Part shown: piece by piece, positions 301 to 58,086 of the stretch | How positions within the stretch are numbered: position 1 is the stretch's first letter | Layout: each line of letters begins with the position of its first letter | IMG/VR virus record: IMGVR_UViG_3300017786_003484 | Coordinates: 62,001 to 126,000 of that record | Strand: one strand, 5' to 3' | DNA: 64,000 bases | Notes under the pieces: generated by a model | What the model was told of the DNA's origin: nothing | Databases searched by the model: none | What the model saw: only the letters and a program-made list of their open reading frames with translations | Position numbers and translations under genes: made by a program

Positions 301-1674
301 CTAGTTAACTATCCTCCAATAACCTTGTTCAAATATTCCTTCTATTGCTATTACCCAAGTTTCTCCGTCGTAATACAACTTCTCACCTGAGTTAGCATTA
401 GTAGTATACCCTATTGTGTTTACCGCCGTTGAGTCGAAACTGACTACCCAATCTGTACCATTATATTCAATAATATCGTCTTCTCCTGCTTCTAATAATC
501 CCCACGGACCTCCATCAAATGGGACAATATTATTAACTAGTAGATATCTCTGACCGGTTGCTTCTGCTGGTAAATTTCCAACTCCGGGTTGTGATTTCTG
601 TGGATTAATAATACCATTGATAGAAGTAATTGTATCATTTGGCAATGTATCTTGATTCAATGTAAAAGCAATTAGATTTTCGTTGCCACTTACAATAGCA
701 TCACATATTAATATAACTTCGTCGGCTTCGTCTGCAAAAGCTGAACTTGGACCTATTCTTAATCTAATTTCTGTAATACCCGGTTTGAATCCACCATGCA
801 AATTAAAATGGGTTGTCCAATTTAATAAATCTGTACCTTGTGTTCTATCAATATTAGTATTATCATTATTTAATAATTCAATATTATCTGAATTTACTTT
901 AATATGTCTATTTTCAAAAGTAAGCCATTGTCTTTGTGTATTTCCGTTAAAATTAATATTTAAACTTTCAATACTTACATTATCAATATCTTCATATGCA
1001 GATTGTAATATACTATGAATAAGAACTTGTCTTTTAATTTTTGCAGGTGGTGTTAAGTAGATTGGTAATTGATATATCAAACTTGAAACATCAATAATAT
1101 CATCTTGTCCATTTGGAATCTGTCTTGCTGTCCATGTGGTATTGATTAACTCAACAACTCCTAAACTTGTCCAATCAAATGGATTATCACTACTTTGTAA
1201 GTTAACACTTGGATTAAAGAGCAATAGTATTTGCTCTAGTAATTGTAACTTTTGTTCTGTATTACTAGTCCATATATCAACATTAAGAGTTAGGTCATAA
1301 GGAATAGGAGATATTCTTTCTAGTGTATAAGACTCGCCAAGTTCATCTAAAAACTCATTATTATTAGAATCAAACTTCTTTTCTAATACTTGAGCTCTAT
1401 CAATATGAGTTGGATTTAATCTTCTTTCCGGACTAGGAATTAATTCTGAGATATAAACAGATATAAACGGAACAGTATTGATTTTATTTTCTGAATTTTC
1501 TTTAATAATATGAGATGCCATTCTGCTAGTATCGCCATATCTAACCGGTACTAAATGAAAGTAATCTGCTCCATTGTCGTCTTTACCCATCTTAACAGAA
1601 AATCCGCCAAATACTCTCATAAATTGTACTAGCCATCTTCTTATTTGTTGATCATAAAAATATGTTTGTGCCAT
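301..1674 (-). CDS. gp15: Tail sheath stabilizer/tail terminator, T4 gp15-like
   Basis: N-terminal YFYDQQIRRWLVQF, VPVRYG and PIPYDLTLNVDIWTSNTEQKLQLLEQILLLFNP match the gp15 pattern; located with neck genes. Confidence 0.8.
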   Translation of the reverse strand: MAQTYFYDQQIRRWLVQFMRVFGGFSVKMGKDDNGADYFHLVPVRYGDTSRMASHIIKENSENKINTVPFISVYISELIPSPERRLNPTHIDRAQVLEKKFDSNNNEFLDELGESYTLERISPIPYDLTLNVDIWTSNTEQKLQLLEQILLLFNPSVNLQSSDNPFDWTSLGVVELINTTWTARQIPNGQDDIIDVSSLIYQLPIYLTPPAKIKRQVLIHSILQSAYEDIDNVSIESLNINFNGNTQRQWLTFENRHIKVNSDNIELLNNDNTNIDRTQGTDLLNWTTHFNLHGGFKPGITEIRLRIGPSSAFADEADEVILICDAIVSGNENLIAFTLNQDTLPNDTITSINGIINPQKSQPGVGNLPAEATGQRYLLVNNIVPFDGGPWGLLEAGEDDIIEYNGTDWVVSFDSTAVNTIGYTTNANSGEKLYYDGETWVIAIEGIFEQGYWRIVN

Positions 1675-1919
1675 TATTTTTTATCCTGTTTCAATATTTG
1701 TTTTTGCATTTCCTCAAGAGTTTCATTGTTTACACATTGTATATTTAACTCTGTTATGTTTGGAAAAGCCGATCTTAAACCTTTATCTAAACCGTCTGCA
1801 TATATTGTTTGGTATCCCTTGCAATCGTTAGCATTTTCAAATTTTAAAGACGTGTTTATTTTTAACTCAACCTCTTCAGATCCTGCAAACATTACTAAAG
1901 CCACTAGAAACCAAGTCAT
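1674..1919 (-). CDS. Small protein with hydrophobic N-terminus and a Cys pair
   Basis: 81 aa; abuts gp14-like and gp15-like genes; MTWFLVALVMFAG...FENANDC...IQC. Confidence 0.65.
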   Translation of the reverse strand: MTWFLVALVMFAGSEEVELKINTSLKFENANDCKGYQTIYADGLDKGLRSAFPNITELNIQCVNNETLEEMQKQILKQDKK

Positions 1920-3020
1920 CTAATCATCCGTCCTAGGTTTTTTAAATACTTTAGATAAAGTTTGCTTTTCGCTAGTAATACCTTTTTCGTCTGCTGGATT
2001 ACTAGATCTAGTTTTGTTATCATTATTAATAAATGCATTAGTTGGTGTTCTAGGTCGTAAGTCGCCTCCAAATCCTGCTTGTTCAACACTATCAAATATT
2101 CTAAGCCATTTTTTACCTATATACTGGAATAATCTATTAGGAACAAAATCACTTCTAATAAAATATTCTTGCTGGTCAGGATTGCTAGGAAAACTTAAAC
2201 CAGATGAAACTAAATTCTTATCTGGTAATCCACCTACTTTAATGTCTTTTACAGGTCCGCTATCCGGATCTGCTGTTGGCTCTTTTCCTTCTTTTTCTCC
2301 AAAGAAAGATGAATCGTCCCATAAGCCTGAGTCGGGTACAAGTACCTCTGACGAAGCAATAACTGCTTCAGAAATTTCAACTTCTTTTTGGTAGGTACTT
2401 AATGCATTCTTTAAACTATCTTCATCTTCTGGATCACCAAGTATTCCTCGATATTCCTGTGCATCCATCATTGGAGATGCTTTTATTCTCCATAAATGAG
2501 GCCACCATGTAGGACCAAAACCTTCTGCGGCCCTAGATGCATCATTAATAACATAAAATTTATTAATGCTCTTTGCACCAGCATCTAACAGTAAGTCATC
2601 ATTTAAGTGAGGTAATTCTATAACATCACCAGCCATAAGTTTTCTACCTAATATAGAAGCCATATCGTTTGTATGGAAAGTAATAAAAATAGTATCAGCA
2701 CTAAGGAATAAACCAAACTGGCTTAAATCAAAGTCAGTATCTGCAACATTATATGTTCCTCTTAATTCGTAAATTGTAGTATCATAAACACGATCTCTAT
2801 TTTCTAAAAATAGTAAATCTTGTATATCCAACTCAGATACATCACCTTTTGCTTGTAAATTTGGTTGTGCAGGATCATTTGTTTCTCCCTGCGACGCAGG
2901 TCCTAAATACTTGTGGATATAGATAGAGGTACCACCTGCATTAACAGCTTCTCGTATAATGCGGTCTTGGTAGTGATAATCCTTACCTTTATCGTTATTC
3001 CAGAGTTGAATTCTTGGCAT
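1920..3020 (-). CDS. gp14: Head closure/neck protein, T4 gp14-like
   Basis: IREAVNAGGTSIYIHKY, DLLFLENRDRVYD, FDLSQFGLFL..DTIFITFH, GDVIELPHL motifs; SD AGGAG upstream. Confidence 0.75.
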   Translation of the reverse strand: MPRIQLWNNDKGKDYHYQDRIIREAVNAGGTSIYIHKYLGPASQGETNDPAQPNLQAKGDVSELDIQDLLFLENRDRVYDTTIYELRGTYNVADTDFDLSQFGLFLSADTIFITFHTNDMASILGRKLMAGDVIELPHLNDDLLLDAGAKSINKFYVINDASRAAEGFGPTWWPHLWRIKASPMMDAQEYRGILGDPEDEDSLKNALSTYQKEVEISEAVIASSEVLVPDSGLWDDSSFFGEKEGKEPTADPDSGPVKDIKVGGLPDKNLVSSGLSFPSNPDQQEYFIRSDFVPNRLFQYIGKKWLRIFDSVEQAGFGGDLRPRTPTNAFINNDNKTRSSNPADEKGITSEKQTLSKVFKKPRTDD

Positions 3021-43894: not shown

Positions 43895-44179
43895 ATGACT
43901 GAAGTTCACAGAGATACAGATTCTAGAATATGCGGAGCACAAACCGTTGTTGCTGGTAACTCAACTGTCTTTGCAAATAATTTACTGGTAAGTGTTGATG
44001 CAGATCCTAATTCACACGGCTCCGGCAGTATTATTGCAAGTACAAAAAATGTTTATGCTCATAACAAACTAATTGTTGAGAACGGTGATGCCGCTAACCC
44101 GGATTCATTATGCCCAATACCACCTCATTGTGGCCCAGACACTAGTTCAGGGTCTCCTAATGTATTTGTAGGAAGTTAG
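43895..44179 (+). CDS. PAAR-like baseplate spike tip, T4 gp5.4-like
   Basis: VHRDTD..CG, TVFANN, NVYAHN..IVENGD, H/C metal ligands, GSPNVFVG end. Confidence 0.85.
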   Translation: MTEVHRDTDSRICGAQTVVAGNSTVFANNLLVSVDADPNSHGSGSIIASTKNVYAHNKLIVENGDAANPDSLCPIPPHCGPDTSSGSPNVFVGS

Positions 44180-44180
44180 C

Positions 44181-46043
44181 ATGGTTAATATTCCAGTAAT
44201 CCCAGGAGTCAATGTTCAAACACAAGGAATACTCAATAAGTCTATTAAAGACATAATTTGTGCGATACTCTTTGGCGGTATTGGAAACCTTTTAAAAGGA
44301 AATATCATATGTATTGAAGCAAATATAAACGAGATGCTTGAAGATGCTGGATATGCTAACTTATATGATATAAAAGACGAATTAAGATTACTACAAGATG
44401 AAGTTAAAGCATTTAACGACCATTTAGGTATAAATGATATAACGCAAAGGATTAATGATGCGTTAGCAGAAGTAAGATATCTACTAAGTCTAGGAGGATT
44501 ATGTCCTGTTCCAATTAAGATACCAAATATTAACGGAGATATATTAGATCAAGTCACTGATAATGTTTTTAATAACTTACAAGGTGTATTAAGTGCATTT
44601 GGTCCATTGCTAAAACCTAAAATTTGTATTGATGCACAAGGAAGAATAAACACAGGATCTTTTGATCCAGGTAGTATACTTGATAATATCAGGAAAGCAT
44701 CACAAAATGCGTTAAATGCTGGAAGTGTAATACCATCAAGTATTACATCAGGCTTTAATAACCAAATAAGCGGTGTTACAAGCAGTATTAAACAGGCAAG
44801 GGCAATAGAACTATTTCCAGACTTTAGACACAAGCATAACTTATTAACAGGAGCACCTGTTGTTGCTGGACAACCAGCGATAACTATTGCCGCTAGACCA
44901 TCAGATGCTGATATTGCCGCAGTAGCTGGACTTTCGACTACAAGTGGCCCAGCATTTGAGGCCGCAGGAGCCTCTTATCCTCCTCAAGGAAATCCTAATT
45001 TAACAGATGCAACTAAGCAAGCACAACAGTTGGTTGCCAATGTTGCAAATAGTGCAAACTATCCTATTAATGCTGATAAAAATCTATGGGCAAGAGCATT
45101 GGGACCTGAAGTATATGCATTAGCATTAGATGCTTTAAACGGAGATGACCCATTTGTAGGTCAATCTCAAGATGTCTATGATTATTGTGGAAGAGTAGTT
45201 TCGCAAGAAACACAAACTATTACCGGAGATCCATTAGGTGCAGGATTGTCAGATACTACAGATGCAAATCTAACACCAACACCAATAAACTATAGTTTAC
45301 TATGGATTGATGCACCAGCACAAAGTAGGGTTGGTTGGGCAGTTAGTGGAATTACAGAAGAAGCATTAGTACCAGATGACTATGGTTGCGAAGTACTAAC
45401 ACCAGCACTAGCATTAAACCCTGAAATTGAGTTATTTCAAGGCAAATCTCATATACTAAGTCTGCCACCAAGTAACCCAAATGTTAATTCTTTGGAAATA
45501 AGCAATTTTGGCTATAAAGATAACGGTTTAAGTGCCGTACGGACCCAAATTTCCTACGAAATGCCAGTTGGACAGGAATTTTACATATACGAAGCCAAAT
45601 TAGACGGTTCAGGTAATAGAGTACCCGATATAACGAAGAGATGGACAAATGGACTGGTTCGTTTTGAATTTTCTGAATACTTAGATGAAGCAAATGGCAG
45701 AAACGAAGATCAAATTACTTGGGCTCAATCATTTATTCCGGATTTAATTCCAGATCCAAATGATACCAATAAGCAATTTGATTCTCAAGGACGATTGTTA
45801 AAGAGTACTTTGATTCAGGCACCGCTACCTCCTGAACCTGGAGAAGTTTGGACTGATAATGGATCAGTAGTATACGATAGTCCTACAGGTGGCAATCCAA
45901 TCTTAGTAAAAACTTGGAAACGAGCAGTAGCAAATCTTGTACTTGGCGAGAATATGCTTATTGAAGTAGACAGTACCTTCCCTGATTACCTAACCTACAG
46001 TAATGAGGCTGGTACCGTATTTGGGCTACTAAAAATAACGTAG
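44181..46043 (+). CDS. Large hypothetical protein, probably baseplate-associated
   Basis: 620 aa immediately after the PAAR gene; IICAILFGG, LGGLCP motifs. Confidence 0.55.
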   Translation: MVNIPVIPGVNVQTQGILNKSIKDIICAILFGGIGNLLKGNIICIEANINEMLEDAGYANLYDIKDELRLLQDEVKAFNDHLGINDITQRINDALAEVRYLLSLGGLCPVPIKIPNINGDILDQVTDNVFNNLQGVLSAFGPLLKPKICIDAQGRINTGSFDPGSILDNIRKASQNALNAGSVIPSSITSGFNNQISGVTSSIKQARAIELFPDFRHKHNLLTGAPVVAGQPAITIAARPSDADIAAVAGLSTTSGPAFEAAGASYPPQGNPNLTDATKQAQQLVANVANSANYPINADKNLWARALGPEVYALALDALNGDDPFVGQSQDVYDYCGRVVSQETQTITGDPLGAGLSDTTDANLTPTPINYSLLWIDAPAQSRVGWAVSGITEEALVPDDYGCEVLTPALALNPEIELFQGKSHILSLPPSNPNVNSLEISNFGYKDNGLSAVRTQISYEMPVGQEFYIYEAKLDGSGNRVPDITKRWTNGLVRFEFSEYLDEANGRNEDQITWAQSFIPDLIPDPNDTNKQFDSQGRLLKSTLIQAPLPPEPGEVWTDNGSVVYDSPTGGNPILVKTWKRAVANLVLGENMLIEVDSTFPDYLTYSNEAGTVFGLLKIT

Positions 46044-46044
46044 G

Positions 46045-46224
46045 ATGGAGATATTTTTGATATGTTTGGTATTGTTCTTGCTCATTGTAGCAATTATGAG
46101 TATAGGCCTCCTAAAAGGCCGTTCTGTAAGAGGAACATGTGGTGGTGCAGGTTACGTTTGCTCCATGTGTGGAGAGGTAAGTGTACTCCCTCAGAAGAAA
46201 AAGGTTGACATTACGGACCTTTAG
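46045..46224 (+). CDS. nqrM: NqrM/DUF539-like Na+-NQR maturation peptide (59 aa; not in ORF track)
   Basis: MEIFLICLVLFLLIVAIMSIGLLKGRSVRGTCGGAGYVCSMCGEVSVLPQKKKVDITDL: one TM helix, M.IG, G[ST]CGG, CxxC. Confidence 0.75.
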   Translation: MEIFLICLVLFLLIVAIMSIGLLKGRSVRGTCGGAGYVCSMCGEVSVLPQKKKVDITDL

Positions 46225-46233
46225 TGCTATGTT
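46205..46233 (+). promoter_or_regulatory. Early promoter of the AAAGGTTGAC family
   Basis: AAAAAGG-TTGACA-17 nt (TTACGGACC...)-TATGTT. Confidence 0.6.
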
Positions 46234-46269
46234 ATACATAATAGTGTAATATATGAAAGGATTTAAGTG

Positions 46270-46650
46270 ATGCATGTTAGTAAATTGTCTATTGTTGCGG
46301 CGTTGTCGCTCATAATGATGTTAATAACATTTAACATAGCAACGGCTCACGAATATTCATACAAGCATTATCATAATTCTCATGATAGTTGGGACGTTGA
46401 CAGGTATGATGATTATAGTTACTATCACAGTGATTATTATAAACGTTATAAAAGAAATGATCGCGAAAGAGAACATTGGGATTGGTATTATGACGATAAG
46501 AGTGGCCCAGAAAGAGAGGACACATATTACATGCCAACACCTTCTCCAATAATCGTGCAACCTGTTCCTCCTATAGGTTATGAAAGAGTTATTGCATATG
46601 ATAACTTATGTCATTGCAATATATACGTTCTTGTACCTATCAGACAATAA
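46270..46650 (+). CDS. Exported His/Tyr/Asp-rich low-complexity protein
   Basis: Signal peptide ending ATA-HE; HEYSYKHYHNSHDSWDVDRYDDYSYYHSDYY; C-terminal CHC. Confidence 0.6.
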   Translation: MHVSKLSIVAALSLIMMLITFNIATAHEYSYKHYHNSHDSWDVDRYDDYSYYHSDYYKRYKRNDREREHWDWYYDDKSGPEREDTYYMPTPSPIIVQPVPPIGYERVIAYDNLCHCNIYVLVPIRQ

Positions 46651-46758
46651 TCTTAAAACCCTACCTATTAGGTAAATATTGGTAATATTGCTTTTATAAA
46701 TCTGATCGATACAGATTTTAGAATATTATTGACCTAGAAGGAAAGGAGAATTATACAA

Positions 46759-47838
46759 ATGGAGCCAATTAAATTAAAGTGGCTAATAGCTCACGAGCCA
46801 CAATACCTATTTGTCCGCACGGCAAAAGCATTCCAAGAAGAATTAGAAAAAAGATGTCCAGGAGAGTTTGATATTGAAATCCTAGACATGAAAACTTACA
46901 TTCAAAAGTACGATGAAGTACCAGAATTACATCTTAAACCAGCATCTATAAAAAACTTAGAGAAAGACTGGGAAAATAGCAATAATATGGGCGGCGGAAT
47001 TTTTAAATCTGTGGCACAATCAGAGATAGGCAAGAAATGGAAAGCATATTTTTCTGCAATTAAGGATGGACGTATTGACATTAGTCAAACACAAATTACA
47101 GTTATAGGATCTTTCTTATATAAGCCTTTTCACTCTTTAGACCTTCCATTCCTATTCAAGGATCATGACCATGTAACCAGAGCATTAGACGGATGGATTG
47201 GTAAAAAACTTCGCGGCGAGCTGGAAGATAGAACTGGAGTTAAATCTTTAGGTTTTACTTACTCAGGCGGATTTAGAATTATCGGTTCTAACCATGATAT
47301 TGAAGGAGTATCTGACTTAAAAGATACAACTGTACAGACTGTTCCGACTACTACTGCAATGTTTAATAGTCCAGAAATTGGCAGTACTGCTATTCCTAGA
47401 AGGTCAATGGATATTCAAGAAGCTAAAGATTTTGCTAAAGATAGTAACTCGGCTGTTGAAACAACTTACCTAAGATTTAAAGGAACAAATATTTTAAAGA
47501 CAAACCATTCTATGTTCTTAACTAGTATTTTAGCAGGATCAAAATTATTTGACAAGCTAACACCAGAACAACAAGAAGCTTTCAAAGAATCTGCTTATGC
47601 AGTATCAAAGATTGAAAGAAAATGGTCACTTGAAGACTGTGAAAAGTATGAAAGAGAAGCAGAAGAGAAAGGAATTCAGATAAGAGATATTACTCAAGAA
47701 GAATCTGATTTTCTTGCTTCTAATGCTCGTGTTTCGTACGAAGATTATTTTTCAACTGATCATCAAAACGGTGGTAAAGTGCCAGACGAGCTTTATCATA
47801 AACGTAAACGTATTGTTGACGATATTAAAGCAATATAA
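46759..47838 (+). CDS. dctP: Divergent TRAP substrate-binding protein (DctP fold) without signal peptide
   Basis: GRIDI, LDLPFLFKDHDH, LGFTYSGGFR, KLTPEQQEAFKESA; SD AAGGAG before the ATG and no hydrophobic leader. Confidence 0.8.
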   Translation: MEPIKLKWLIAHEPQYLFVRTAKAFQEELEKRCPGEFDIEILDMKTYIQKYDEVPELHLKPASIKNLEKDWENSNNMGGGIFKSVAQSEIGKKWKAYFSAIKDGRIDISQTQITVIGSFLYKPFHSLDLPFLFKDHDHVTRALDGWIGKKLRGELEDRTGVKSLGFTYSGGFRIIGSNHDIEGVSDLKDTTVQTVPTTTAMFNSPEIGSTAIPRRSMDIQEAKDFAKDSNSAVETTYLRFKGTNILKTNHSMFLTSILAGSKLFDKLTPEQQEAFKESAYAVSKIERKWSLEDCEKYEREAEEKGIQIRDITQEESDFLASNARVSYEDYFSTDHQNGGKVPDELYHKRKRIVDDIKAI

Positions 47839-47845
47839 GTAACAA

Positions 47846-47897
47846 AATAGACTAGATAGGTAATTCAATTTTAAAACCCTATCTAGTCTATTCTTTT
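47846..47897 (+). terminator. Long hairpin terminator
   Basis: AATAGACTAGATAGG / CCTATCTAGTCTATT 15-bp stem followed by CTTTT. Confidence 0.65.
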
Positions 47898-47957
47898 GAT
47901 AAATAAAGTTAACATGTGTATAGCACATGTTATTAATTAAAAAGGTACAAATAAAAT

Positions 47958-48176
47958 ATGGCAATAGAACTAACAGGCAAAGTAAAATGGTTTCAAGACG
48001 CAAAAGGATGGGGTTTTATTAAACCTGACGATGGTTCCGATGATGTTTTTGCACACTATTCAGCAATTAATTCGGATGGCTTTAAATCATTAAAAGAAGG
48101 TCAAGCAGTAACATTTGAAGTAATTCAAGGTGCTAAAGGACGTCAAGCCGCCAATATCAATTTAATTGAATCTTAA
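47958..48176 (+). CDS. cspA: Cold-shock protein
   Basis: GKVKWF..KGWGFI (RNP1), DVFAHYSAI (RNP2), [20 protein letters not shown]. Confidence 0.97.
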
Positions 48177-48309
48177 GACTAACTCTCCATAAATTATAAC
48201 AATAGTAATCTTAAAGACTAAATAGATTATGGTAGTACATGTATAGGAACATAGAGTAACTATGCATATAACATCTGTTTACAGAAAATAGATAAGGCAT
48301 TAGAGATTC

Positions 48310-48807
48310 ATGAGTTTAACTGACTTCATCGACAGAAGTATAAGTCGATTTGCAAAATATTATTCTTGGTTTGCATTACTAATGGTATTGTTCGTTGTGA
48401 TCAATGTCTTGGGAAGATATTTCTTTGACATTCGCAATGATTATGCAGTTGATTCAACATGGCAATTATACGGTATGCTTATTATGTTTGGTTGCAGTTA
48501 TTCATTAGGAAAAGAAGCACATATTAGAACAGATCTGTTCTGGAACAATTATAAAGATCGTACAAAAGCAATTATTGACTTTGTAAGTTATCTCTTACTA
48601 TTCTTTCCTTCATTTGCACTTATCACATACATCAGTTTCAATGATACATCAGCCGCTATTGAGATGAACGAACGTAGTTCTGAAACAATGGCCCAGCTTA
48701 TTATATGGCCTATGAAGATTGGTATCACACTTGGTTTAGTACTTTTGATGGTACAAGCATTGAGTCAAATGATCAAATGTTATAGAAGGATTTTTATCAA
48801 TGAGTAA
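48310..48807 (+). CDS. dctQ: TRAP transporter small permease
   Basis: Four TM segments; VLGRYFF, WQLYG, HIRTDLF. Confidence 0.92.
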   Translation: MSLTDFIDRSISRFAKYYSWFALLMVLFVVINVLGRYFFDIRNDYAVDSTWQLYGMLIMFGCSYSLGKEAHIRTDLFWNNYKDRTKAIIDFVSYLLLFFPSFALITYISFNDTSAAIEMNERSSETMAQLIIWPMKIGITLGLVLLMVQALSQMIKCYRRIFINE

Positions 48808-50194
48808 TGAATGGTTAGCAATGACAATGTTATTTACAATGATTGCTGGCATATTTGTTGGAGTTCCAGTTAGTTTTACACTAACATTCTTAGCATTAAT
48901 TTTTGGATTAATGGGATTAGGATTAAGTGTGTTTGATCTCACATATCTCAACCTATTAGGAGGACTTTCAGATGAAGTGCTGATGAGTATTCCTATGTTT
49001 ATCCTTATGGGTTATGTTGCTGAACGAGCCGGACTGGTAGAGAATTTATTTGAGAGCTTAAAAAAGGTACTTGCAGGAGTTCCAGGCAACTTATACATTG
49101 TTGTTATCTGTATTGCAGTATTAATTAGTTTAGCAACAGGAGTAGTCGGAGCATCAGTAACACTATTGGGCATTATGGCCGCTCCAAGTATGATTAAGCA
49201 AGGATACGATCCTAAACTATCAGCAGGAGTAATAGCAGGAGGCGGATCTCTTATCATGATCCCTCCATCCATTCCCCTTATTGTAATGGCGCCTACAATG
49301 AATCTTAATATCATTGACGTATATGCGGCCGCAATAGGACCAGGATTAGCGATTGCATTTATGTATCTAGTATACGTTATATTCCTTATAAAAACAAAGC
49401 CAGAGGTAGCACCTATGATACCTGTGGAAGAAAGAGTAAAAGTAGATTTCAAGTTAATTCTGTTAACGTTATGGCATATTGTGCCATTAGCATCATTGAT
49501 TCTTATTACATTAGGATCAATGTTATTTGGACTAGCAACTAGCACAGAAGCTGGTGCCTTTGGTGCCTTTGGTGCTTTATGTTTAGCCGCTATTAACAGA
49601 AGATTAACTTTAACAAATATTCAAGAAGCATTATTAAAAACTACCAATACGTCGGCAGTGGTAATGTTATTAGCAATTACGTCAACAATATTTGGTGCCG
49701 TATTTGCTTCCTTGGGTGGTGACAAAATCATTGTATCAGTACTAACTTCAATGCCTATACCCGGATGGGCAATAGTTGGAGCGATATTAGTGTTATGTCA
49801 TATTTTAGGCTGGCCCTTTGAGTGGCCAGTGGTAGTGCTAGTGTTCTTACCAATTTTCTTACCAGTATTAATTGATACTGGTGTTGACTTAATTTGGTTT
49901 GCGGCCGCTTTGGGTGTTATTTTACAAACAGCATATTTAACACCTCCTGTAGCCTTAACCGGATACTACCTAAAACAGGTGGTGCCTTCGTGGGATCTTA
50001 AATTAATATTCAAAGCAATGATGCCCTTTATGTATATTCAGGTTGTTTGTGTTGTAATATTGTTTATTACACCTGGCCTTGCAACATGGTTACCTAATTA
50101 CCTAGCAGAGCAAAGAAAAAATATAGTACAAGAAGTACTAGATGAGGATGTCAAAGGACAGGAAGTCGACTTCCTAGGTGTCCTTGGACAATAA
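48800..50194 (+). CDS. dctM: TRAP transporter large permease
   Basis: GVPVSF, IPMFILMG, GVVGASV, MIPPSIPLIV, ATSTEAG, AYLTPPV..GYYLK, PGLATWLP. Confidence 0.95.
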   Translation: MSNEWLAMTMLFTMIAGIFVGVPVSFTLTFLALIFGLMGLGLSVFDLTYLNLLGGLSDEVLMSIPMFILMGYVAERAGLVENLFESLKKVLAGVPGNLYIVVICIAVLISLATGVVGASVTLLGIMAAPSMIKQGYDPKLSAGVIAGGGSLIMIPPSIPLIVMAPTMNLNIIDVYAAAIGPGLAIAFMYLVYVIFLIKTKPEVAPMIPVEERVKVDFKLILLTLWHIVPLASLILITLGSMLFGLATSTEAGAFGAFGALCLAAINRRLTLTNIQEALLKTTNTSAVVMLLAITSTIFGAVFASLGGDKIIVSVLTSMPIPGWAIVGAILVLCHILGWPFEWPVVVLVFLPIFLPVLIDTGVDLIWFAAALGVILQTAYLTPPVALTGYYLKQVVPSWDLKLIFKAMMPFMYIQVVCVVILFITPGLATWLPNYLAEQRKNIVQEVLDEDVKGQEVDFLGVLGQ

Positions 50195-50213
50195 TATTTT
50201 GGAGAATAAAAAT

Positions 50214-51308
50214 ATGAAACGTTTCATCGGAGCGATATCAGCTATCGCAATGTCATTTGGCGTAGTGGCTTCAGTAGCAACTGCAAATGCCAAAGAACTA
50301 CAGATTGCATCTAGTTTTGGAGCAATCTCAACTTTTAACGAGCAAGCAAACTTTCTTGCCGAAAGAGTTAAAGTATTAACTGACGGAAAAATTGATATGA
50401 AAATCAGACCTTCCGGCGCATTAGTTCCTTCTTTTAAGGTTCTAGATGCTACGGCGTCAGGTGCAGTAGATGGTGCATGGACTCAGTCTTATTACTGGGT
50501 AGGAAAGTCAAAGACTCTTGCATTGTTTAATAGTCCGTTGGGAGGACCTTACGGTATGGACGGGATTGATTTCCTAGGTTGGATGTTCCACGGTGGTGGA
50601 CTTGAATTGTATAACGATTTTTATCAGAATGAGTTAAAAATGGATGTACAGGCACTTCCAGCAATGCCTACTCAGAATCAGCCATTAGGTTGGTTTCATA
50701 GACCAATTAAAGATCTAGCAGATCTTAAAAACTTTAAATGTCGTCAAACTGGCGCCAACGTAGAACTTTATGCTCGTATGGGTATGCAGACTATTGGTAT
50801 GCCAGGTGGTGAGATTATGGCCGCGGCCCAAAAGGGTGTTATTAATTGTGCTGAATTCGTTGGTGGTTTAGAAGACGAACGTCTTGGATTTCCAACTGTA
50901 TGGAAATACTACTACTTGAATTCATTGCATGAGCATTCAAATACTGGTGATCTATTGATTAACGGTAAAGTGTGGCGTTCAATGACTAAGCAACAGCAGA
51001 CCGCTGTTCGTTCTGCCGCTTATGAGTCATATCTATGGTGGTTAACTGATATTCAAGCAAAAAATGGTCAAGCACTTGCTAGAATGATCAAAGAGCATGG
51101 CGTTAGAGTTATGAAGACTCCAGCAGATATTTTGGTTGCTGAGTTAGAAACTATTGACGAAATGTTAGCAGAAAATGCCGCAAAGGATCCTTATTTTGCA
51201 AAAGTACTTGCTTCTCAGAAAGCATGGGCAAAGAAAGTAGTTCCATTTAAGAACGTAGCATTTACGCCTTATAACTATGCCGCAGATTACTACTGGAAGA
51301 AAAAGTAG
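50214..51308 (+). CDS. dctP: TRAP substrate-binding protein, TakP-like subfamily, with signal peptide
   Basis: MKRFIGAISAIAMSFGVVASVATANA signal; GALVPSFKVLDA..GAVDG, YYWVGK, WMFHGGGLEL, GWF.RPI..L.DLK..KCR, AEFVG, LGF. Confidence 0.93.
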   Translation: MKRFIGAISAIAMSFGVVASVATANAKELQIASSFGAISTFNEQANFLAERVKVLTDGKIDMKIRPSGALVPSFKVLDATASGAVDGAWTQSYYWVGKSKTLALFNSPLGGPYGMDGIDFLGWMFHGGGLELYNDFYQNELKMDVQALPAMPTQNQPLGWFHRPIKDLADLKNFKCRQTGANVELYARMGMQTIGMPGGEIMAAAQKGVINCAEFVGGLEDERLGFPTVWKYYYLNSLHEHSNTGDLLINGKVWRSMTKQQQTAVRSAAYESYLWWLTDIQAKNGQALARMIKEHGVRVMKTPADILVAELETIDEMLAENAAKDPYFAKVLASQKAWAKKVVPFKNVAFTPYNYAADYYWKKK

Positions 51309-51328
51309 TTTTAAAAGCATATAACGTT

Positions 51329-51361
51329 AAAAATAGGGTGCTTTATGCATCCTATTTTTTT
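51329..51361 (+). terminator. Intrinsic terminator
   Basis: AAAAATAGGGTGC-TTTAT-GCATCCTATTTTTT. Confidence 0.8.
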
Positions 51362-51502
51362 GGCTATAACTTCTATATTTGTTATAAATGTATAAATACA
51401 CTTGGATAGATACGGTTTAATACCTTATCGGAAAAAGCCAGTTTTCTATCTCAATGTTACTTGAAGTAATATTGTTTTCTTAAGAAAAAAAAGGAGTCAA
51501 TT

Positions 51503-52441
51503 ATGACACAGAAAATTAGATGGGTTCTAGCACATGAGCCAATTGAATTATTTCTAAGAGCGGCAAAAGTTTTCGCATCAGAAGTTAATGCAAAAGCAGA
51601 AGGCGCACTAGATATTGAAGTTATGACAATGAATGAGTATTCTGCAAAGTATAATAACGGTGTTGTTGTTACTAAGCACGAACTTGTTGATATGATTAAC
51701 AGAGGCGACATTGAAATGTCCCAAACATACACAGTAGACATTGGCGAATATGATCACGAATTCCGTGCATTAGATATGCCATTCCTATTTGAGTCACACG
51801 ACCACGCAACTAAAGTGTTCGAAGGCCCAATTGGTCAGTCACTACTAGACGGATTAACAGAATCAGCTGGTGTTAAAGGTTTAGCCTTTACATACTCCGG
51901 TGGATATAGAATTATTCCTGGACAAGAAGGAATTGATACTATTGAAGATATTAGAGATCTTAAACTTCGTACTTCTTTCTCACCTGTTGCTATTGAAACA
52001 TTCAAAGCAGTTGGTGCAAACGTAGTTCCAATGGAACTAGAAGAAATGACAGATGCAATCCAAGATGCAGACATTCAAGTTGGTGAGTCTACTTACCCAC
52101 GTATCTATGCATTAGGACAAGACAGAGTTTCTAAGGTTATTAACCACACAGAACACTCATTGTTCTTAACAAGCATCTTAATCAACCAAGACTTCTTTGC
52201 AACTCTTGGTGAAGAACTACAAGGTATTGTTGTAGACGCCGCTAAAACAGCCGCTAATTACGAACGTGTAATCAGCATTGAAGACGTTGCACTTACACAA
52301 GCTAAAGCTGAAAGCGATGGCATTGAAGTTCGTAGAATGTCAACAGAAGAAAAAGCTCGTTTCAAAGCCGCTACTGCTCATGTTTATGACATGTTCCCAG
52401 AGTTAGCTGGAACAGTTAAGAAGATCCAAGATACAAAATAA
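51503..52441 (+). CDS. dctP: Second signal-less DctP-fold protein
   Basis: RGDIEM, LDMPFLFESHDH, AFTYSGGYR, DLKLRT, GANVVPM, NHTEH; SD AAGGAG directly before MTQKIRW; TATAAATA at 51391-51398. Confidence 0.88.
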   Translation: MTQKIRWVLAHEPIELFLRAAKVFASEVNAKAEGALDIEVMTMNEYSAKYNNGVVVTKHELVDMINRGDIEMSQTYTVDIGEYDHEFRALDMPFLFESHDHATKVFEGPIGQSLLDGLTESAGVKGLAFTYSGGYRIIPGQEGIDTIEDIRDLKLRTSFSPVAIETFKAVGANVVPMELEEMTDAIQDADIQVGESTYPRIYALGQDRVSKVINHTEHSLFLTSILINQDFFATLGEELQGIVVDAAKTAANYERVISIEDVALTQAKAESDGIEVRRMSTEEKARFKAATAHVYDMFPELAGTVKKIQDTK

Positions 52442-52462
52442 GATATCTTAGAACTACTATGG

Positions 52463-52490
52463 AAAAGGCGCTAATGGCGCCTTTTCTTTT
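52463..52490 (+). terminator. Intrinsic terminator
   Basis: AAAAGGCGC-TAATG-GCGCCTTTT-CTTTT. Confidence 0.8.
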
Positions 52491-52546
52491 GGGTAAATTA
52501 TCAACCAAAAAGGATTATAAGTAGAAGTAACAAAGAAGGAAATATT

Positions 52547-52834: not shown

Positions 52835-53920
52835 ATGCCGGCAAGAAATCATAGAAATTGGTTAAAGAAACCATTAGTAGAATATGTTAGTAGCGAAATA
52901 TATTCAAGTCAAGAAATATTTGAAGAAGAAATCGAAAGTATCTTTTCAAAGGTGTGGGTACCAGTATGCCACATCAGTGAAATGTATAACAAATTAGACT
53001 ATCGAACATCACAAATTGCTGGACATAATATTATTGTGTACAATACCGGAGATGGTGTACGAGCATATCGTAATTATGGCAGTTGGGCACCTACTGGAAC
53101 ATTGCAAGCACCTATTGTAACAGTTGAACCACAACTACATAGCGAAGTAAAGCACGGAGGTATGGTATGGGTAACACTTGATCCTAATCCTACACAGAGT
53201 GTTGAAGAGTGGACAGCAGGTGCATTTGATTGCATTGCTGATGCTATTGACACAGAAGAACTAGAAATTTTTCATTATCATAAAGCAATTATTCCTACCA
53301 ACTACAAACTATGGCATGATACTAACAGTGAATTCTATCATGACTTCATGCATTACTTTAATCGTGTAACTGGTTTCAACGATGAGTATTTTGCTAGAAA
53401 GAATATTCCCTTTGATAACGGGCATGTGAACGTTAGTAGTTTTACTGTAAATTATACAGAGTTTGATAAAGAAGGCGATAGAGGTGAACTAAGTTTTCCT
53501 AACTTACCTCCAAACCAATGGTATATGGTAGATTTGTTTCCTGGCTTTAACTTTAATTTACGTGGTAGTGCATATCGTTCAGATAGTGTTACGCCACTTG
53601 GACCAAATAGTGTACTAATAGAGTTTAGAGGATACGGTTTAAAGAAAGATACTCCAGAAGAAAGACAAACTCGTATTAAACATCATAATACTATCTGGGG
53701 ACCGTTTGGCAGAAACTTACATGAAGATCTTTTAGGTGTAACCGGGCAAGGAGCATCAATGTCTCCAGGCACAGAGAAAAGAAATATTTTACATGGAAGA
53801 CATGAAAATAGTACTATACATGATGAAGTTGGTATGCGTCACTACTATGCAGAATGGGGAAAATATATGGAGTTAGATCCTAGTAATCCAATAAAAGAGG
53901 TTGACAAAAAGGCCGCATAG
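52835..53920 (+). CDS. Ring-hydroxylating oxygenase alpha-subunit homolog lacking the Rieske cluster
   Basis: IFEEE.E.IFSKVWVPVCHISE, RAYRN, GGMVWVTL, NYKLWHDTNSEFYHDFMH, LFP, HEDL, RHYYAEW; no CxH/CxxH. Confidence 0.85.
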   Translation: MPARNHRNWLKKPLVEYVSSEIYSSQEIFEEEIESIFSKVWVPVCHISEMYNKLDYRTSQIAGHNIIVYNTGDGVRAYRNYGSWAPTGTLQAPIVTVEPQLHSEVKHGGMVWVTLDPNPTQSVEEWTAGAFDCIADAIDTEELEIFHYHKAIIPTNYKLWHDTNSEFYHDFMHYFNRVTGFNDEYFARKNIPFDNGHVNVSSFTVNYTEFDKEGDRGELSFPNLPPNQWYMVDLFPGFNFNLRGSAYRSDSVTPLGPNSVLIEFRGYGLKKDTPEERQTRIKHHNTIWGPFGRNLHEDLLGVTGQGASMSPGTEKRNILHGRHENSTIHDEVGMRHYYAEWGKYMELDPSNPIKEVDKKAA

Positions 53921-53929
53921 TGTTATAAA
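53901..53929 (+). promoter_or_regulatory. Promoter of tmRNA gene
   Basis: AAAGAGG-TTGACA-17 nt-TATAAA. Confidence 0.7.
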
Positions 53930-56419: not shown

Positions 56420-57058
56420 ATGCTATCAACATATGCAAATAAACAAAATACTCATCTTGTAATAGATACAACAACTAATGGAATATTAATTGCAGTACAT
56501 AGCAACGTTGTTGCGAATGCAATATGTTTTAAAATATTGAATACAGAAGCAATGTCTATTAGGCTAGTAGATTTCAACGAGGAAATAAATCCATTGCTTA
56601 AACCACAGTTTAATGAGTCTAGTAATTTTATATTAACTAAAGTTGGACACAACTTAACACCTCAATCAACAGCAAATGTTGGACAACTTGTAAAAAGTAC
56701 AGATGGCAATGGCCGTTTTGGTGTAGCTAAAATGTCTGAAGTAACAGATGAGTGGATAGCATTAAGAAAGAAAGCACATAATATCAAAGAAGTTATAGCA
56801 AGTAGCGATCTTCGAGTTCTTAGATCAGCAACACCGAGCAAAAAGTTCTTTGGAGACACTATTACCTTTCCTTTTATTAAAAAAGAACTTGATAAATGTA
56901 ATCCACAGGAAGATCAATACACAGATGCTATTCGAGAATGGGCAAATATAGTAAATGTTCCTGTAAAAAAAGGATTTGAAATGCTATCAGCAGAAAGCAA
57001 TAATATTACTCATTTGGTTAATAATTCAAGAATATTTTGGAGTAAAAAATGTCTTTAA
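56420..57058 (+). CDS. Hypothetical protein, paralog of 58079-58798
   Basis: Shares ML.T..N..N..LID and EL.KC.P.EDQYT...EWA with the 58079 ORF. Confidence 0.7.
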   Translation: MLSTYANKQNTHLVIDTTTNGILIAVHSNVVANAICFKILNTEAMSIRLVDFNEEINPLLKPQFNESSNFILTKVGHNLTPQSTANVGQLVKSTDGNGRFGVAKMSEVTDEWIALRKKAHNIKEVIASSDLRVLRSATPSKKFFGDTITFPFIKKELDKCNPQEDQYTDAIREWANIVNVPVKKGFEMLSAESNNITHLVNNSRIFWSKKCL

Positions 57059-58086
57059 ATTATGCTTTTAGTACTAAATTAAAACATGGTAGTGAATATG
57101 CTAAGAAAGACATTGCTGTTTTTCGTTCTCTTTATCATATGGATCCAGATCCATTTTTAGTTGATAGAACTGACTCTGTGGTCTTTCCTTTCTCAGAAAA
57201 CAATTATTTTCCAATGATACAACCGTTATCTAATGTTATGAGTTGGGAAGAATGTACAAAAGAGAGAGTTGAAGAACTAATATCCTTTGACAAAGAACTT
57301 TATGTTATGTGGAGCGGAGGAATAGATAGTACATTAATGCTTTTATCTTTTATGAAATATAGTAATATGAATAATGTTACAATAGTTTTAAACATGGACT
57401 CAATTAAAGAATATCCTTATTTTTATAAAAGGTTTATAGCTCAATGTAATTATAAATTACTGTCAACTGAACAATTAATGAATAATGCATTGCTAAATGA
57501 CATCAATGGATTAATAGTATCAGCCGAACATGCTGATCAGTTAGTTGGATCTCCTTTGGCTCAGTTACTTGCAACAACATCAGGTAGAACAATGCTTGGT
57601 CTTCCATTTGATGAAGAAAATTTCAGCAAATTTTTAACAAACTTAAATGTTCCAGTACATCATATTGATACAATAATGGAACTCTATAACATTAGTATTA
57701 AAAACAGTCCTCGTCCAATTAAGAATATGTGGGATCTCTGTTGGTGGCATGGATTTAACTTTAAATGGCAAACCATCTACATGAAACTGGCTATTAGAAT
57801 AAAAAATCCTTTGAATCTTTTAACTTTCTACTCTTCGGTAAACTTTCAAAATACCAGTATACACCAAGAAGGTAATACACTTGATCTAAAGAAAGTTTTT
57901 AAAGATATAATCGTTAATTATACCGAAGATACTGAATACCTAAGAAAAGAAAAATTTGCATCTTCAACATTATATTATGGACTAACCTCTTCGACAGGAT
58001 TAGACAAAAATTGGAATAAAATTAATGTTGATATGATTGAATACTATAATAAAGATAACACTATAAAGGAAATAATGAATGCTTGA
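57049..58086 (+). CDS. PP-loop ATP pyrophosphatase (asparagine-synthetase C-domain-like, no glutaminase domain)
   Basis: VMWSGGIDST PP-loop; IVSAEHADQLVG resembles AsnB GeGaDelFgG. Confidence 0.8.
   Translation: MSLNYAFSTKLKHGSEYAKKDIAVFRSLYHMDPDPFLVDRTDSVVFPFSENNYFPMIQPLSNVMSWEECTKERVEELISFDKELYVMWSGGIDSTLMLLSFMKYSNMNNVTIVLNMDSIKEYPYFYKRFIAQCNYKLLSTEQLMNNALLNDINGLIVSAEHADQLVGSPLAQLLATTSGRTMLGLPFDEENFSKFLTNLNVPVHHIDTIMELYNISIKNSPRPIKNMWDLCWWHGFNFKWQTIYMKLAIRIKNPLNLLTFYSSVNFQNTSIHQEGNTLDLKKVFKDIIVNYTEDTEYLRKEKFASSTLYYGLTSSTGLDKNWNKINVDMIEYYNKDNTIKEIMNA

What the first reader, a model, noticed from the sequence alone, without database searches (positions are those of the whole stretch)
46759..52441. 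Two signal-peptide-less DctP paralogs flank the transporter
ORFs 46759 and 51503 both begin directly at the mature fold (IKLKWLIAHEP / IRWVLAHEP), with strong SDs and no upstream in-frame leader. They are clearly related to each other and distinct from the exported DctP. 51503 keeps the ligand Arg (KLRT), while 46759 has Gln (TVQT) and an insertion. Cytoplasmic SBPs cannot serve a permease normally. They may be intracellular metabolite sensors or sinks, or proteins released at lysis or carried on the virion.
Basis: partly seen in the sequence, partly recalled or inferred. Interest (0 to 1): 0.65.

Follow-up and report, generated by a model that had tools for sequence, protein, structure and literature searches.

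The report
Leaderless phage DctP-fold binding proteins
Two genes of a widespread marine phage encode TRAP-type (DctP) solute-binding proteins with no export signal; they belong to a large, conserved, transcribed and almost purely viral family that most likely binds a small molecule inside the infected cell rather than serving a transporter.

Summary
ORF A (46759-47838) and ORF B (51503-52441) are full DctP-fold proteins (Pfam PF03480; models at pLDDT 94 and 96). The first strand starts at residues 3-4. In-frame stops lie just upstream and both have good Shine-Dalgarno sites. They flank a csp-dctQ-dctM-dctP unit whose DctP has a normal Sec leader.

The window lies in a 244 kb IMG/VR phage record. 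The leaderless state is clade-wide: all 240 listed metagenome homologues, and in effect all viral copies among more than 400 IMG/VR contigs per type. dN/dS is 0.14-0.21. Contigs from four marine metatranscriptomes cover both genes, and B appears as its own piece.

The nearest leader-bearing relatives are orphan periplasmic proteins of Bdellovibrionota and allied MAGs.

The link to the transporter is lineage-specific. A and B each end at a terminator-like hairpin. Only this phage lineage has dctQM nearby. Ten other large viral records with the family, three of them at least 94% complete, have no DctM.

Best reading: cytoplasmic small-molecule binders, with B binding a carboxylate and A an altered ligand, acting as a sequestering sink or carrier. 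The ligand is unknown. No evidence supports a virion role. I rate it a new variant of a known kind, with moderate to high interest.

The parts
46759..47838 (+). ORF A. Leaderless DctP-fold protein of 359 aa. The ligand Arg is replaced by Gln (T-V-Q-T) and there is an insertion of about 45 aa.
   Evidence: Model pLDDT 93.7. DctP/SiaP fold. RNA contigs cover 46704-47844. dN/dS 0.14-0.17.
51503..52441 (+). ORF B. Leaderless DctP-fold protein of 312 aa. It keeps both carboxylate-binding arginines: G-G-Y-R, and the Arg of the K-L-R-T motif.
   Evidence: Model pLDDT 96. TM 0.88 to IseP, SiaP and other TRAP SBPs. RNA contigs form a separate piece with 5' ends at 51402-51531 and 3' ends at 52439-52465. 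dN/dS 0.17-0.21.
46744..46749 (+). Shine-Dalgarno site of A (AGGAGA), 10 nt before the ATG.
   Evidence: Read from the sequence.
51493..51496 (+). Shine-Dalgarno site of B (GGAG), 6 nt before the ATG.
   Evidence: Read from the sequence.
47846..47899 (+). Terminator-like hairpin after A: 15-bp stem followed by a U-rich tail.
   Evidence: Fold z-score -5.4. RNA contig X15 ends at 47844.
51329..51362 (+). Intrinsic terminator after the exported dctP: 9-13 bp stem followed by U7. It separates dctP from B.
   Evidence: Fold z-score -3.9. RNA contigs of dctM-dctP end at 51137-51320.
51360..51398 (+). Promoter-like site for B: TTGGCT, 17 nt, TATAAA, with a second TATAAATA at 51391-51398.
   Evidence: Read from the sequence. 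The RNA contig 5' ends begin at 51402. This is an inference, not a mapped transcription start.
52461..52491 (+). Intrinsic terminator after B: GC-rich 12-bp stem followed by U4.
   Evidence: Fold. RNA contigs end at 52439-52465.
47958..48176 (+). Context: cold-shock protein gene between A and dctQ.
   Evidence: PF00313, 8e-30.
48310..50194 (+). Context: dctQ (48310-48807) and dctM (48800-50194), the TRAP membrane subunits.
   Evidence: PF04290 2.5e-20 and PF06808 1.7e-60.
50214..51308 (+). Context: exported DctP with a Sec leader. It is of the TakP / keto-acid-binding type and is not close to A or B.
   Evidence: PDB 7ug8 (1.5e-42) and 2hzk (9e-42).
57049..58086 (+). Nearest copy of the virus-typical PP-loop (S-G-G-I-D-S, asparagine-synthetase-like) family. 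This family is the commonest neighbour of B-type genes in other phages.

Best explanation
A and B belong to a large, virus-dominated radiation of DctP-fold (TRAP-type) ligand-binding proteins that have lost the export signal. They therefore act in the cytoplasm of the infected cell, independently of any TRAP permease.

Each is made from its own short transcript and folds into a complete two-lobe Venus-flytrap. B keeps the two arginines that hold the carboxylate in characterised TRAP binding proteins, so it most likely closes around an organic acid. A and many other viral subclades have replaced the second arginine, and A adds an insertion, so they probably bind an altered ligand.

I commit to a stoichiometric binder as the mechanism. 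The protein captures a host or phage cytoplasmic metabolite and holds it, as a sink or buffer. In some lineages it may present the metabolite to phage tailoring enzymes; asparagine-synthetase-like PP-loop enzymes are a recurrent neighbour.

Shown: the fold, the lack of a leader, conservation, transcription, and independence from dctQM. Inferred: cytoplasmic location, ligand class, and sequestration.
For: Leaderless and intact:
- In-frame stops lie upstream.
- The first strand starts at residue 3-4.
- All 240 listed homologues begin 5-22 residues before the W-x-x-A-H-x-P strand with no hydrophobic stretch.
- 86 of 87 IMG/VR copies are leaderless; the exception and the other long N-termini are ORF-extension artefacts.
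- A-type loci show the same.

Functional:
- dN/dS is 0.14-0.21.
- Invariant core motifs are kept.
- RNA contigs from four metatranscriptomes of four studies lie on A, and on B as a discrete piece bounded by the predicted promoter and terminator. The B piece has the highest word depth in each run (contigs, so depth is only indicative).

The same phages keep leaders on binding proteins meant for export:
- The window's own DctP.
- A TctC in L005.
- The sister clade in Bdellovibrionota, Elusimicrobiota and Myxococcota has clear Sec leaders.

Independence from the permease:
- Terminator-like hairpins follow A, dctP and B.
- dctM is near the family in 7 of 80 loci only.
- 0 of 10 large viral records have a DctM, including records 94%, 98% and 100% complete. 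Those records carry 1-3 copies of the family.

Ligand class: the arginine of the G-G-[YF]-R motif is invariant and the Arg of the K-L-R-T motif is conserved in B-type proteins. The second aligns with the K-I-R-V arginine of solved TRAP binding proteins.

Enzyme neighbours:
- A PP-loop gene lies within 6 kb in 59 of 86 viral copies and directly downstream in 34.
- A leaderless subclade in Bdellovibrionota sits in a conserved operon of MFS transporter, a 2OG-oxygenase-like 200-aa protein, and the DctP-like gene.
Against: - No localisation data exist, and no ligand is identified.
- A flytrap that encloses its ligand is not an obvious hand-off device without a docking partner.
- After collapsing to 75% identity clusters, only 4 of 10 B-type clusters are PP-loop-linked, and most A-type loci are not.
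- Co-folding of a directly adjacent PP-loop and DctP-like pair gave no answer.
- In this phage the two genes do sit on either side of a complete TRAP operon, and that arrangement is conserved at 87-90% identity. A link to transport in this lineage is therefore not excluded.
- Word depth of contigs is a weak measure of expression.
Confidence: 0.5

Rival explanations
1. A and B still serve a TRAP permease, the phage's own or the host's. They would reach the periplasm by a leader-independent route, or once the inner membrane is breached late in infection, and so widen the substrate range of DctQM.
For: They flank dctQMP, and the arrangement is conserved in relatives at 87-90% identity. They retain the full binding-protein fold. 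The nearest leader-bearing relatives are periplasmic.
Against: There is no leader anywhere in the clade, while exported binding proteins in the same phages keep theirs. They are separate transcription units. 0 of 10 other large viral records with the family encode a DctM. B is unrelated in subfamily to the cognate exported DctP. By established knowledge, TRAP binding proteins are normally specific to their own QM.
Confidence: 0.1
2. They are anti-defence or regulatory sponges. A diversifying family of cytoplasmic flytraps would soak up a host signalling or alarm metabolite, as known phage sponge proteins do for cyclic nucleotides.
For: The family is virus-dominated with several paralogues per genome. 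The ligand-contact position is variable among subclades: R, Q, T, L, V or I. B is apparently abundantly transcribed. Both genes are stand-alone, moron-like units with their own terminators.
Against: PADLOC gave no hit, and it is a defence library rather than an anti-defence one. The proteins are much larger than known sponges. Known TRAP ligands are ordinary organic acids. No defence genes are linked. This is a special case of the best explanation rather than a true alternative.
Confidence: 0.15
3. The fold has been recruited as an enzyme, or as an obligate subunit of one, in a phage small-molecule or glycan tailoring pathway. Other periplasmic-binding-protein folds have become enzymes (own knowledge: THI5, MqnA/MqnD).
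For: Recurrent neighbours are PP-loop/asparagine-synthetase-like enzymes, a 2OG-oxygenase-like protein, and in L173 AMP-binding enzymes, an SDR, BKACE, a carrier-protein-sized ORF and MBOAT. Polar residues are invariant.
Against: The invariant His, Asp and Arg residues are the ones typical of ordinary DctP proteins: A-H in strand 1, D-x-x-H after P-F-L-F, and H-S-x-F (alignments). No family-specific catalytic constellation was identified. The neighbourhood link is partial. Co-folding gave no answer.
Confidence: 0.12
4. They are virion-associated, or are released at lysis and act outside the cell, for example by binding a host surface or a periplasmic component.
For: Leaderless proteins can leave the cell only with virions or at lysis. 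A PAAR-like gene and a 620-aa unknown gene lie just upstream.
Against: The genes sit in replication and nucleotide-metabolism neighbourhoods (UvsX, gp41-like helicase, NrdAB) in several phage lineages. There is no fibre or structural domain fused. A leaderless cellular subclade sits in a metabolic operon.
Confidence: 0.06

Closest known systems
DctP-family TRAP substrate-binding proteins (SiaP, IseP, DctP, EFI-solved TRAP SBPs)
   Same: They share the Pfam family and the fold: TM 0.8-0.9 for B and 0.64-0.69 for A, normalised by query length. They share the core motifs. B keeps the carboxylate-binding arginines.
   Different: A and B have no signal peptide or lipobox. They are not co-transcribed with QM and are not associated with QM across the family. 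The family is virus-dominated. A lacks the second arginine and carries an insertion.
Orphan periplasmic SBPs (Bug/TctC proteins of Bordetella, AdpC of Rhodopseudomonas; review PMC5812351)
   Same: These are binding proteins encoded away from any membrane partner. The exported Bdellovibrionota sister clade of A and B fits this description, with no dctM within 8 kb.
   Different: Those orphans are exported and belong to the TTT family. The viral clade is leaderless.
Phage-encoded PstS and other transporter AMGs (cyanophages, pelagimyophages; PMC12379486)
   Same: They are phage-borne solute-binding proteins in marine T4-like phages. The window's own dctQMP operon belongs to this kind.
   Different: PstS-type AMGs are thought to plug into the host transporter in the periplasm. 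A and B cannot get there by the Sec route.
Phage small-molecule sponges (Tad1, Tad2, Acb2; from my own knowledge, not tested here)
   Same: They are cytoplasmic, stand-alone, abundantly made binders that act by sequestration.
   Different: The folds are unrelated and the ligands are known (cyclic nucleotides, gcADPR). Nothing here shows a defence link.

Membership tests
DctP family (PF03480) TRAP substrate-binding protein | Sequence match above the curated threshold | tested here: met
   A scores 93.8 bits and B 171.5 bits against a cut-off of 23.4. NCBIfam TRAP_S1 gives 80.6 and 126.2 bits against 50.
DctP family (PF03480) TRAP substrate-binding protein | Two-lobe type II binding-protein fold with the long spanning helix | tested here: met
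   Models at pLDDT 96 and 93.7. The top PDB matches are all TRAP SBPs.
DctP family (PF03480) TRAP substrate-binding protein | Conserved ligand-carboxylate arginine, equivalent to SiaP R147 in the K-I-R-V strand | tested here: inconclusive
   Present in B (K-L-R-T) and across B-type proteins. Replaced by Gln in A and by T, L, V or I in many viral subclades. The first arginine, in G-G-[YF]-R, is invariant in all.
DctP family (PF03480) TRAP substrate-binding protein | N-terminal signal peptide or lipobox for export to the periplasm or cell surface | tested here: not met
Functional TRAP transporter (DctPQM) component | Encoded and expressed with cognate DctQ/DctM | tested here: not met
   Adjacent here, but separated by terminators. 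dctM is near only 7 of 80 viral loci. 0 of 10 large viral records have a DctM.
Functional TRAP transporter (DctPQM) component | Delivers ligand to QM and is required for uptake | not testable with these tools
   Needs transport assays.
Phage auxiliary metabolic gene of transporter type (PstS-like) | Close host homologue that it can replace in the host machine | tested here: not met
   The nearest cellular relatives are 40-54% identical. They are either exported orphans of Bdellovibrionota or leaderless copies in phage-like or mixed contexts.

The most novel reading that the evidence does not exclude
Aquatic large phages carry a previously undescribed class of cytoplasmic metabolite traps derived from TRAP solute-binding proteins. 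The family is diversifying and multi-copy. Its members each sequester a different host small molecule, such as a signalling, defence or regulatory metabolite like 2-oxoglutarate or another organic acid, to reprogramme the infected cell. Predatory Bdellovibrionota use the exported version of the same family on prey contents.
Probability: 0.2. Interest if true: 0.8.

Novelty: new variant of a known kind. Interest (0 to 1): 0.6.

Why it matters
TRAP binding proteins are by definition extracytoplasmic. A conserved, transcribed, leaderless radiation with hundreds of viral contigs per subtype and more than 2,000 metagenome proteins has not been described in the papers I could search.

This phage is cosmopolitan. 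Near-identical DNA occurs in 14 or more marine DNA runs from a dozen studies, and in 6 metatranscriptomes.

If these proteins sequester or channel a cytoplasmic metabolite, they are a new tool of host take-over. They would also be a ready-made set of high-affinity binders for biosensors. Finding the ligand would show which host metabolite matters to many large aquatic phages.

The result also warns against counting every viral "DctP" as a nutrient-uptake AMG.

Tried and rejected
1. Co-folding. I co-folded a directly adjacent PP-loop enzyme with its leaderless DctP-like neighbour (the L103 pair, with my own alignments A6 and A5). Result: no verdict, ipSAE 0.01. This is not evidence either way.

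2. PADLOC scan of A, B, PP-loop paralogues and neighbours: no hits.

3. T4-type late promoter. TATAAATA occurs upstream of B, but the motif occurs only 7 times in the 244 kb genome and is not a general signal. At 53924 it serves as the -10 box of an AGGTTGAC-N17 promoter-like site. I dropped the 'late gene' reading.

4. Cultured phages. tblastn of B against 50,697 phage records found only distant (21-26%) canonical DctP genes in bacterial-looking records. DNA search found only csp matches.

5. Literature. Eight full-text searches found no paper on leaderless or phage-borne DctP proteins. The TRAP/TTT review covers exported orphans only.

6. PP-loop linkage as a general rule. It holds for 4 of 10 B-type clusters at 75% identity and for few A-type loci, so I kept it only as a lead.

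7. DctM in genomes with the exported sister clade. Three of 5 Bdellovibrionota genomes have a DctM elsewhere, so it is not decisive.

8. The big representative protein search was not used, since the claim does not rest on absence of relatives. No alternative genetic code was needed.
Full report
**What the window is.** The window is bases 62001-126000 of a 244,432-base IMG/VR virus record that CheckV estimates to be 74% complete. GC content is about 35%. The window carries a UvsX-like recombinase, a DnaB/gp41-like helicase and NrdAB, so this is a large T4-like aquatic phage.
- Near-identical DNA for 46700-52500 is held by at least 14 marine or seawater DNA runs from about a dozen studies.
- Parts of the same stretch are held by six metatranscriptomes.

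**Checking the observation.** The region reads as follows:
- ORF 46267-46650: a small secreted protein rich in His, Tyr and Asp.
- ORF A, 46759-47838.
- A csp gene, 47958-48176.
- dctQ, 48310-48807.
- dctM, 48800-50194.
- An exported DctP, probable start 50214, ending at 51308, with a classical Sec leader.
- ORF B, 51503-52441.

A and B both pass Pfam PF03480 and NCBIfam TRAP_S1.
- Each starts at the first start codon after an in-frame stop, behind a good Shine-Dalgarno site.
- A and B are 33% identical.
- B shows no significant BLAST similarity to the exported DctP. That protein is of the TakP / keto-acid-binding type: PDB 7ug8 and 2hzk at about 1e-42.
- B has K-L-R-T where A has T-V-Q-T, and A carries an insertion of about 45 residues.
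- AlphaFold models are confident, with pLDDT 96.0 for B and 93.7 for A. The first beta-strand begins at residues 3-4.
- Every top PDB match is a TRAP binding protein, including IseP and SiaP.

**The missing leader is real and the genes are alive.**
- The word search found 1,494 relatives of B and 759 of A.
- All 240 listed relatives begin 5-22 residues before the W-x-x-A-H-x-P strand, with no hydrophobic stretch. The 328-330-residue versions are upstream start calls without a leader.
- Scans of IMG/VR found 426 confirmed stretches for a mixed alignment of both types with B as query and 404 for the A-type alignment, so the two sets overlap.
- Of 87 copies in the first 80 viral loci, 86 are leaderless. 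The exception and all other long N-termini are ORF-extension artefacts with the family-typical internal start.
- Pairwise dN/dS against relatives at 64-90% identity is 0.14-0.21, with no internal stops.
- Contigs from four marine metatranscriptomes of four studies lie on A (46704-47844). They lie on B as a separate piece, with 5' ends at 51402, 51424, 51431 and 51531 and 3' ends at 52439-52465. That piece is distinct from the one covering dctM-dctP (49633-51320).
- In each run the B piece has the highest word depth. These are contigs, so ends and depth are indicative only, and DNA carry-over cannot be excluded. The breaks do fall at the intergenic regions.

**Relation to the transporter.**
- Strong hairpins followed by U-tracts lie after A (47846-47899), after the exported dctP (51329-51362) and after B (52461-52491). 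Their fold z-scores are -5.4, -3.9 and -3.0.
- A promoter-like TTGGCT-17-TATAAA lies at 51360-51388, just before the RNA contig starts. A and B are therefore separate units from csp-dctQMP.
- The whole arrangement is conserved in relatives at 87-90% identity.
- Among 80 viral loci with a B-type gene, a DctM homologue is nearby in only 7, all from this lineage at about 97% identity.
- Ten other large viral records that carry the family have no DctM at all. They include records of 345, 354 and 344 kb that are 94%, 98% and 100% complete. Those records carry 1-3 DctP-like genes.
- Conversely, a different lineage of about 142 kb T4-like phages carries dctQMP, 79% identical to the exported DctP. It lies directly after the gp41-like helicase, with no leaderless paralogue in the 17 kb read around it.
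- The same hot-spot downstream of the helicase holds a leaderless DctP plus two PP-loop genes in another lineage.

Flanking the transporter is thus a lineage-specific juxtaposition of two cargo modules, not a property of the family.

**Relatives with and without leaders.** A scan of one genome per prokaryote species found 89 relatives.
- Those with clear Sec leaders are almost all from Bdellovibrionota MAGs: Bacteriovorax, Bdellovibrio and Pseudobdellovibrio, including contigs of 0.6-1.8 Mb. Some come from Elusimicrobiota and Myxococcota.
- None of them has dctM within 8 kb. Three of 5 such genomes have a DctM elsewhere.
- On a tree rooted with canonical DctPs, a 40-row clade holds 39 leaderless proteins: the viral contigs plus MAG contigs with phage-like neighbours. 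The leader-bearing predator proteins form the neighbouring group.
- A sits on a long branch inside that neighbouring group, so its exact position is uncertain.
- One leaderless subclade lies in genuine Bdellovibrionota context, with flagellins and FtsZ. There it sits in a conserved operon of MFS transporter, a 200-residue protein, and the DctP-like gene.
- That 200-residue protein belongs to virus-dominated clusters in the ESM Atlas and looks like a 2OG-oxygenase or cupin. This is a lead only.
- Phages do keep leaders on binding proteins meant for export: the window's own DctP and a TctC on phage contig L005.

The missing leader is therefore a specific trait of this family, not a habit of phage genes.

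**Neighbours.** The commonest neighbour of B-type genes is a family of 345-490-residue proteins with an invariant S-G-G-x-D-S PP-loop.
- It has weak profile matches to NAD synthase, LarE, QueC and asparagine synthetase.
- Its Atlas clusters are 78-98% viral. The nearest named families are Asn_synthase, QueC and NAD_synthase.
- A member lies within 6 kb of 59 of 86 viral copies and directly downstream of 34.
- The phage in hand has six paralogues, the nearest at 57049-58086.
- After collapsing to clusters at 75% identity, only 4 of 10 are PP-loop-linked, and most A-type loci are not.
- On one MAG contig the pair sits among AMP-binding enzymes, an SDR, BKACE, a carrier-protein-sized ORF and an MBOAT.

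These enzymes act on carboxylates, which fits a carboxylate binder chemically. The link is nevertheless a lead, not a demonstration. Co-folding an adjacent pair gave no answer.

**How it most likely works.**
- A complete flytrap fold under purifying selection implies ligand binding.
- The invariant arginine of the G-G-[YF]-R motif, and in B-type proteins the Arg of the K-L-R-T motif, are the residues that hold the carboxylate in solved TRAP binding proteins. B therefore most likely binds an organic acid.
- A-type and many other viral subclades replace the second arginine with Q, T, L, V or I, which implies altered ligands.
- Without a leader, the protein stays in the cytoplasm of the infected cell.
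- It is transcribed from its own unit, apparently at a high level.

I therefore take the proteins to be stoichiometric cytoplasmic binders that sequester or buffer a metabolite. Hand-off to tailoring enzymes is possible in some lineages. The invariant His, Asp and Arg residues are the ones ordinary DctP proteins also have (alignments), so nothing points to catalysis.

The exported sister group in periplasmic predators suggests, by inference only, that the ligand is a common bacterial cell metabolite.

**Comparison with what is known.**
- The fold and family are those of DctP. Two defining features of a working TRAP binding protein, export and partnership with QM, were tested and are not met. 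I file the proteins as DctP-fold proteins, not as transporter components.
- Exported orphan binding proteins are known (PMC5812351), as are phage PstS-type AMGs (PMC12379486). I found no report of leaderless or viral DctP proteins.
- PHROGs holds a matching family of unknown function, phrog_31178.
- BFVD holds only two split halves from uncultured phages, labelled automatically as DctP/TeaA.
- No cultured phage in the collection carries the clade.

**Verdict.** The cytoplasmic-binder reading is favoured. The tie to the adjacent transporter is not supported as a general feature, and a virion role is unsupported. I rate it a new variant of a known kind, with interest about 0.6.

No alternative genetic code was used.

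Noticed in passing
window 48310-51308; L177-L179: A complete phage-borne TRAP transporter: dctQ, dctM, and an exported TakP / keto-acid-type DctP with a Sec leader. A 79%-identical operon sits directly after the gp41-like helicase in a separate lineage of about 142 kb T4-like phages and is indexed in 123 blocks of the assembly collection. I found no paper describing phage dctQMP.
   Followed up: partly
G000 119049-120086 (window 57049-58086), 128888-129979, 137587-138888, 150008-151474, 196964-198235 (-), 226562-227890: Six paralogues of a virus-dominated PP-loop (S-G-G-I-D-S) asparagine-synthetase-like family in one phage genome. Two of them are paired with a 244-256-aa unknown protein.
   Followed up: partly
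window 52835-53920: A protein like the alpha subunit of ring-hydroxylating oxygenases. It has the catalytic domain PF00848, and its N-terminus matches anthranilate-dioxygenase and GbcA-type large subunits. No C-x-H...C-x-x-H Rieske motif is visible in the sequence.
   Followed up: no
window 46267-46650: A 127-aa ORF with a Sec-type leader and a mature part very rich in His, Tyr, Asp and Arg. It lies just upstream of A behind a strong sigma-70-like site (AGGTTGACA-17-TATGTT at 46202-46233). It is conserved in L174 and matches no family.
   Followed up: no
whole G000; window 3066, 21007, 21106, 46202, 53898, 58821: The motif AAAGGTTGAC(C/A) is 20-37-fold enriched in intergenic regions upstream of + strand genes. 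At 53898 it lies 17 nt before TATAAATA. It is probably the phage's early-promoter -35 element.
   Followed up: partly
G000 159093-165932; 184021-185595; 233475-235028; 168166-169647; 1081-1992 (-): Four tandem radical-SAM paralogues, two B12-binding radical-SAM proteins, a carbamoyltransferase and a fatty-acid-desaturase-like gene lie in the same phage. Homologues of several of these lie near DctP-like genes in Bdellovibrionota and Elusimicrobiota MAGs.
   Followed up: partly
L202 9325-10309; L210 5638-6595 (-); L229 10125-11666; BFVD A0A6J7WI33 / A0A6J7WKL0: In several phages the DctP-like gene is split into two ORFs of about 156-165 aa, one per half of the protein. This could mean split genes, frameshifts or decay in those lineages.
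   Followed up: no
L056 (five copies), L031 (tandem pair), L046/L055/L071 (one Elusimicrobia contig): The exported, orphan version of the family is expanded to several copies per locus in Elusimicrobiota and Bdellovibrionota MAGs.
   Followed up: no
L005 14894-15826: A phage contig of 228 kb that carries a leaderless B-type gene also encodes a TctC (TTT-family) binding protein with a normal Sec leader, next to two radical-SAM genes.
   Followed up: partly
window 43895-44179 and 44181-46043: A PAAR-motif protein of 94 aa and a 620-aa protein with no family match lie directly after nrdB, an unusual place for spike-tip-like genes.
   Followed up: no
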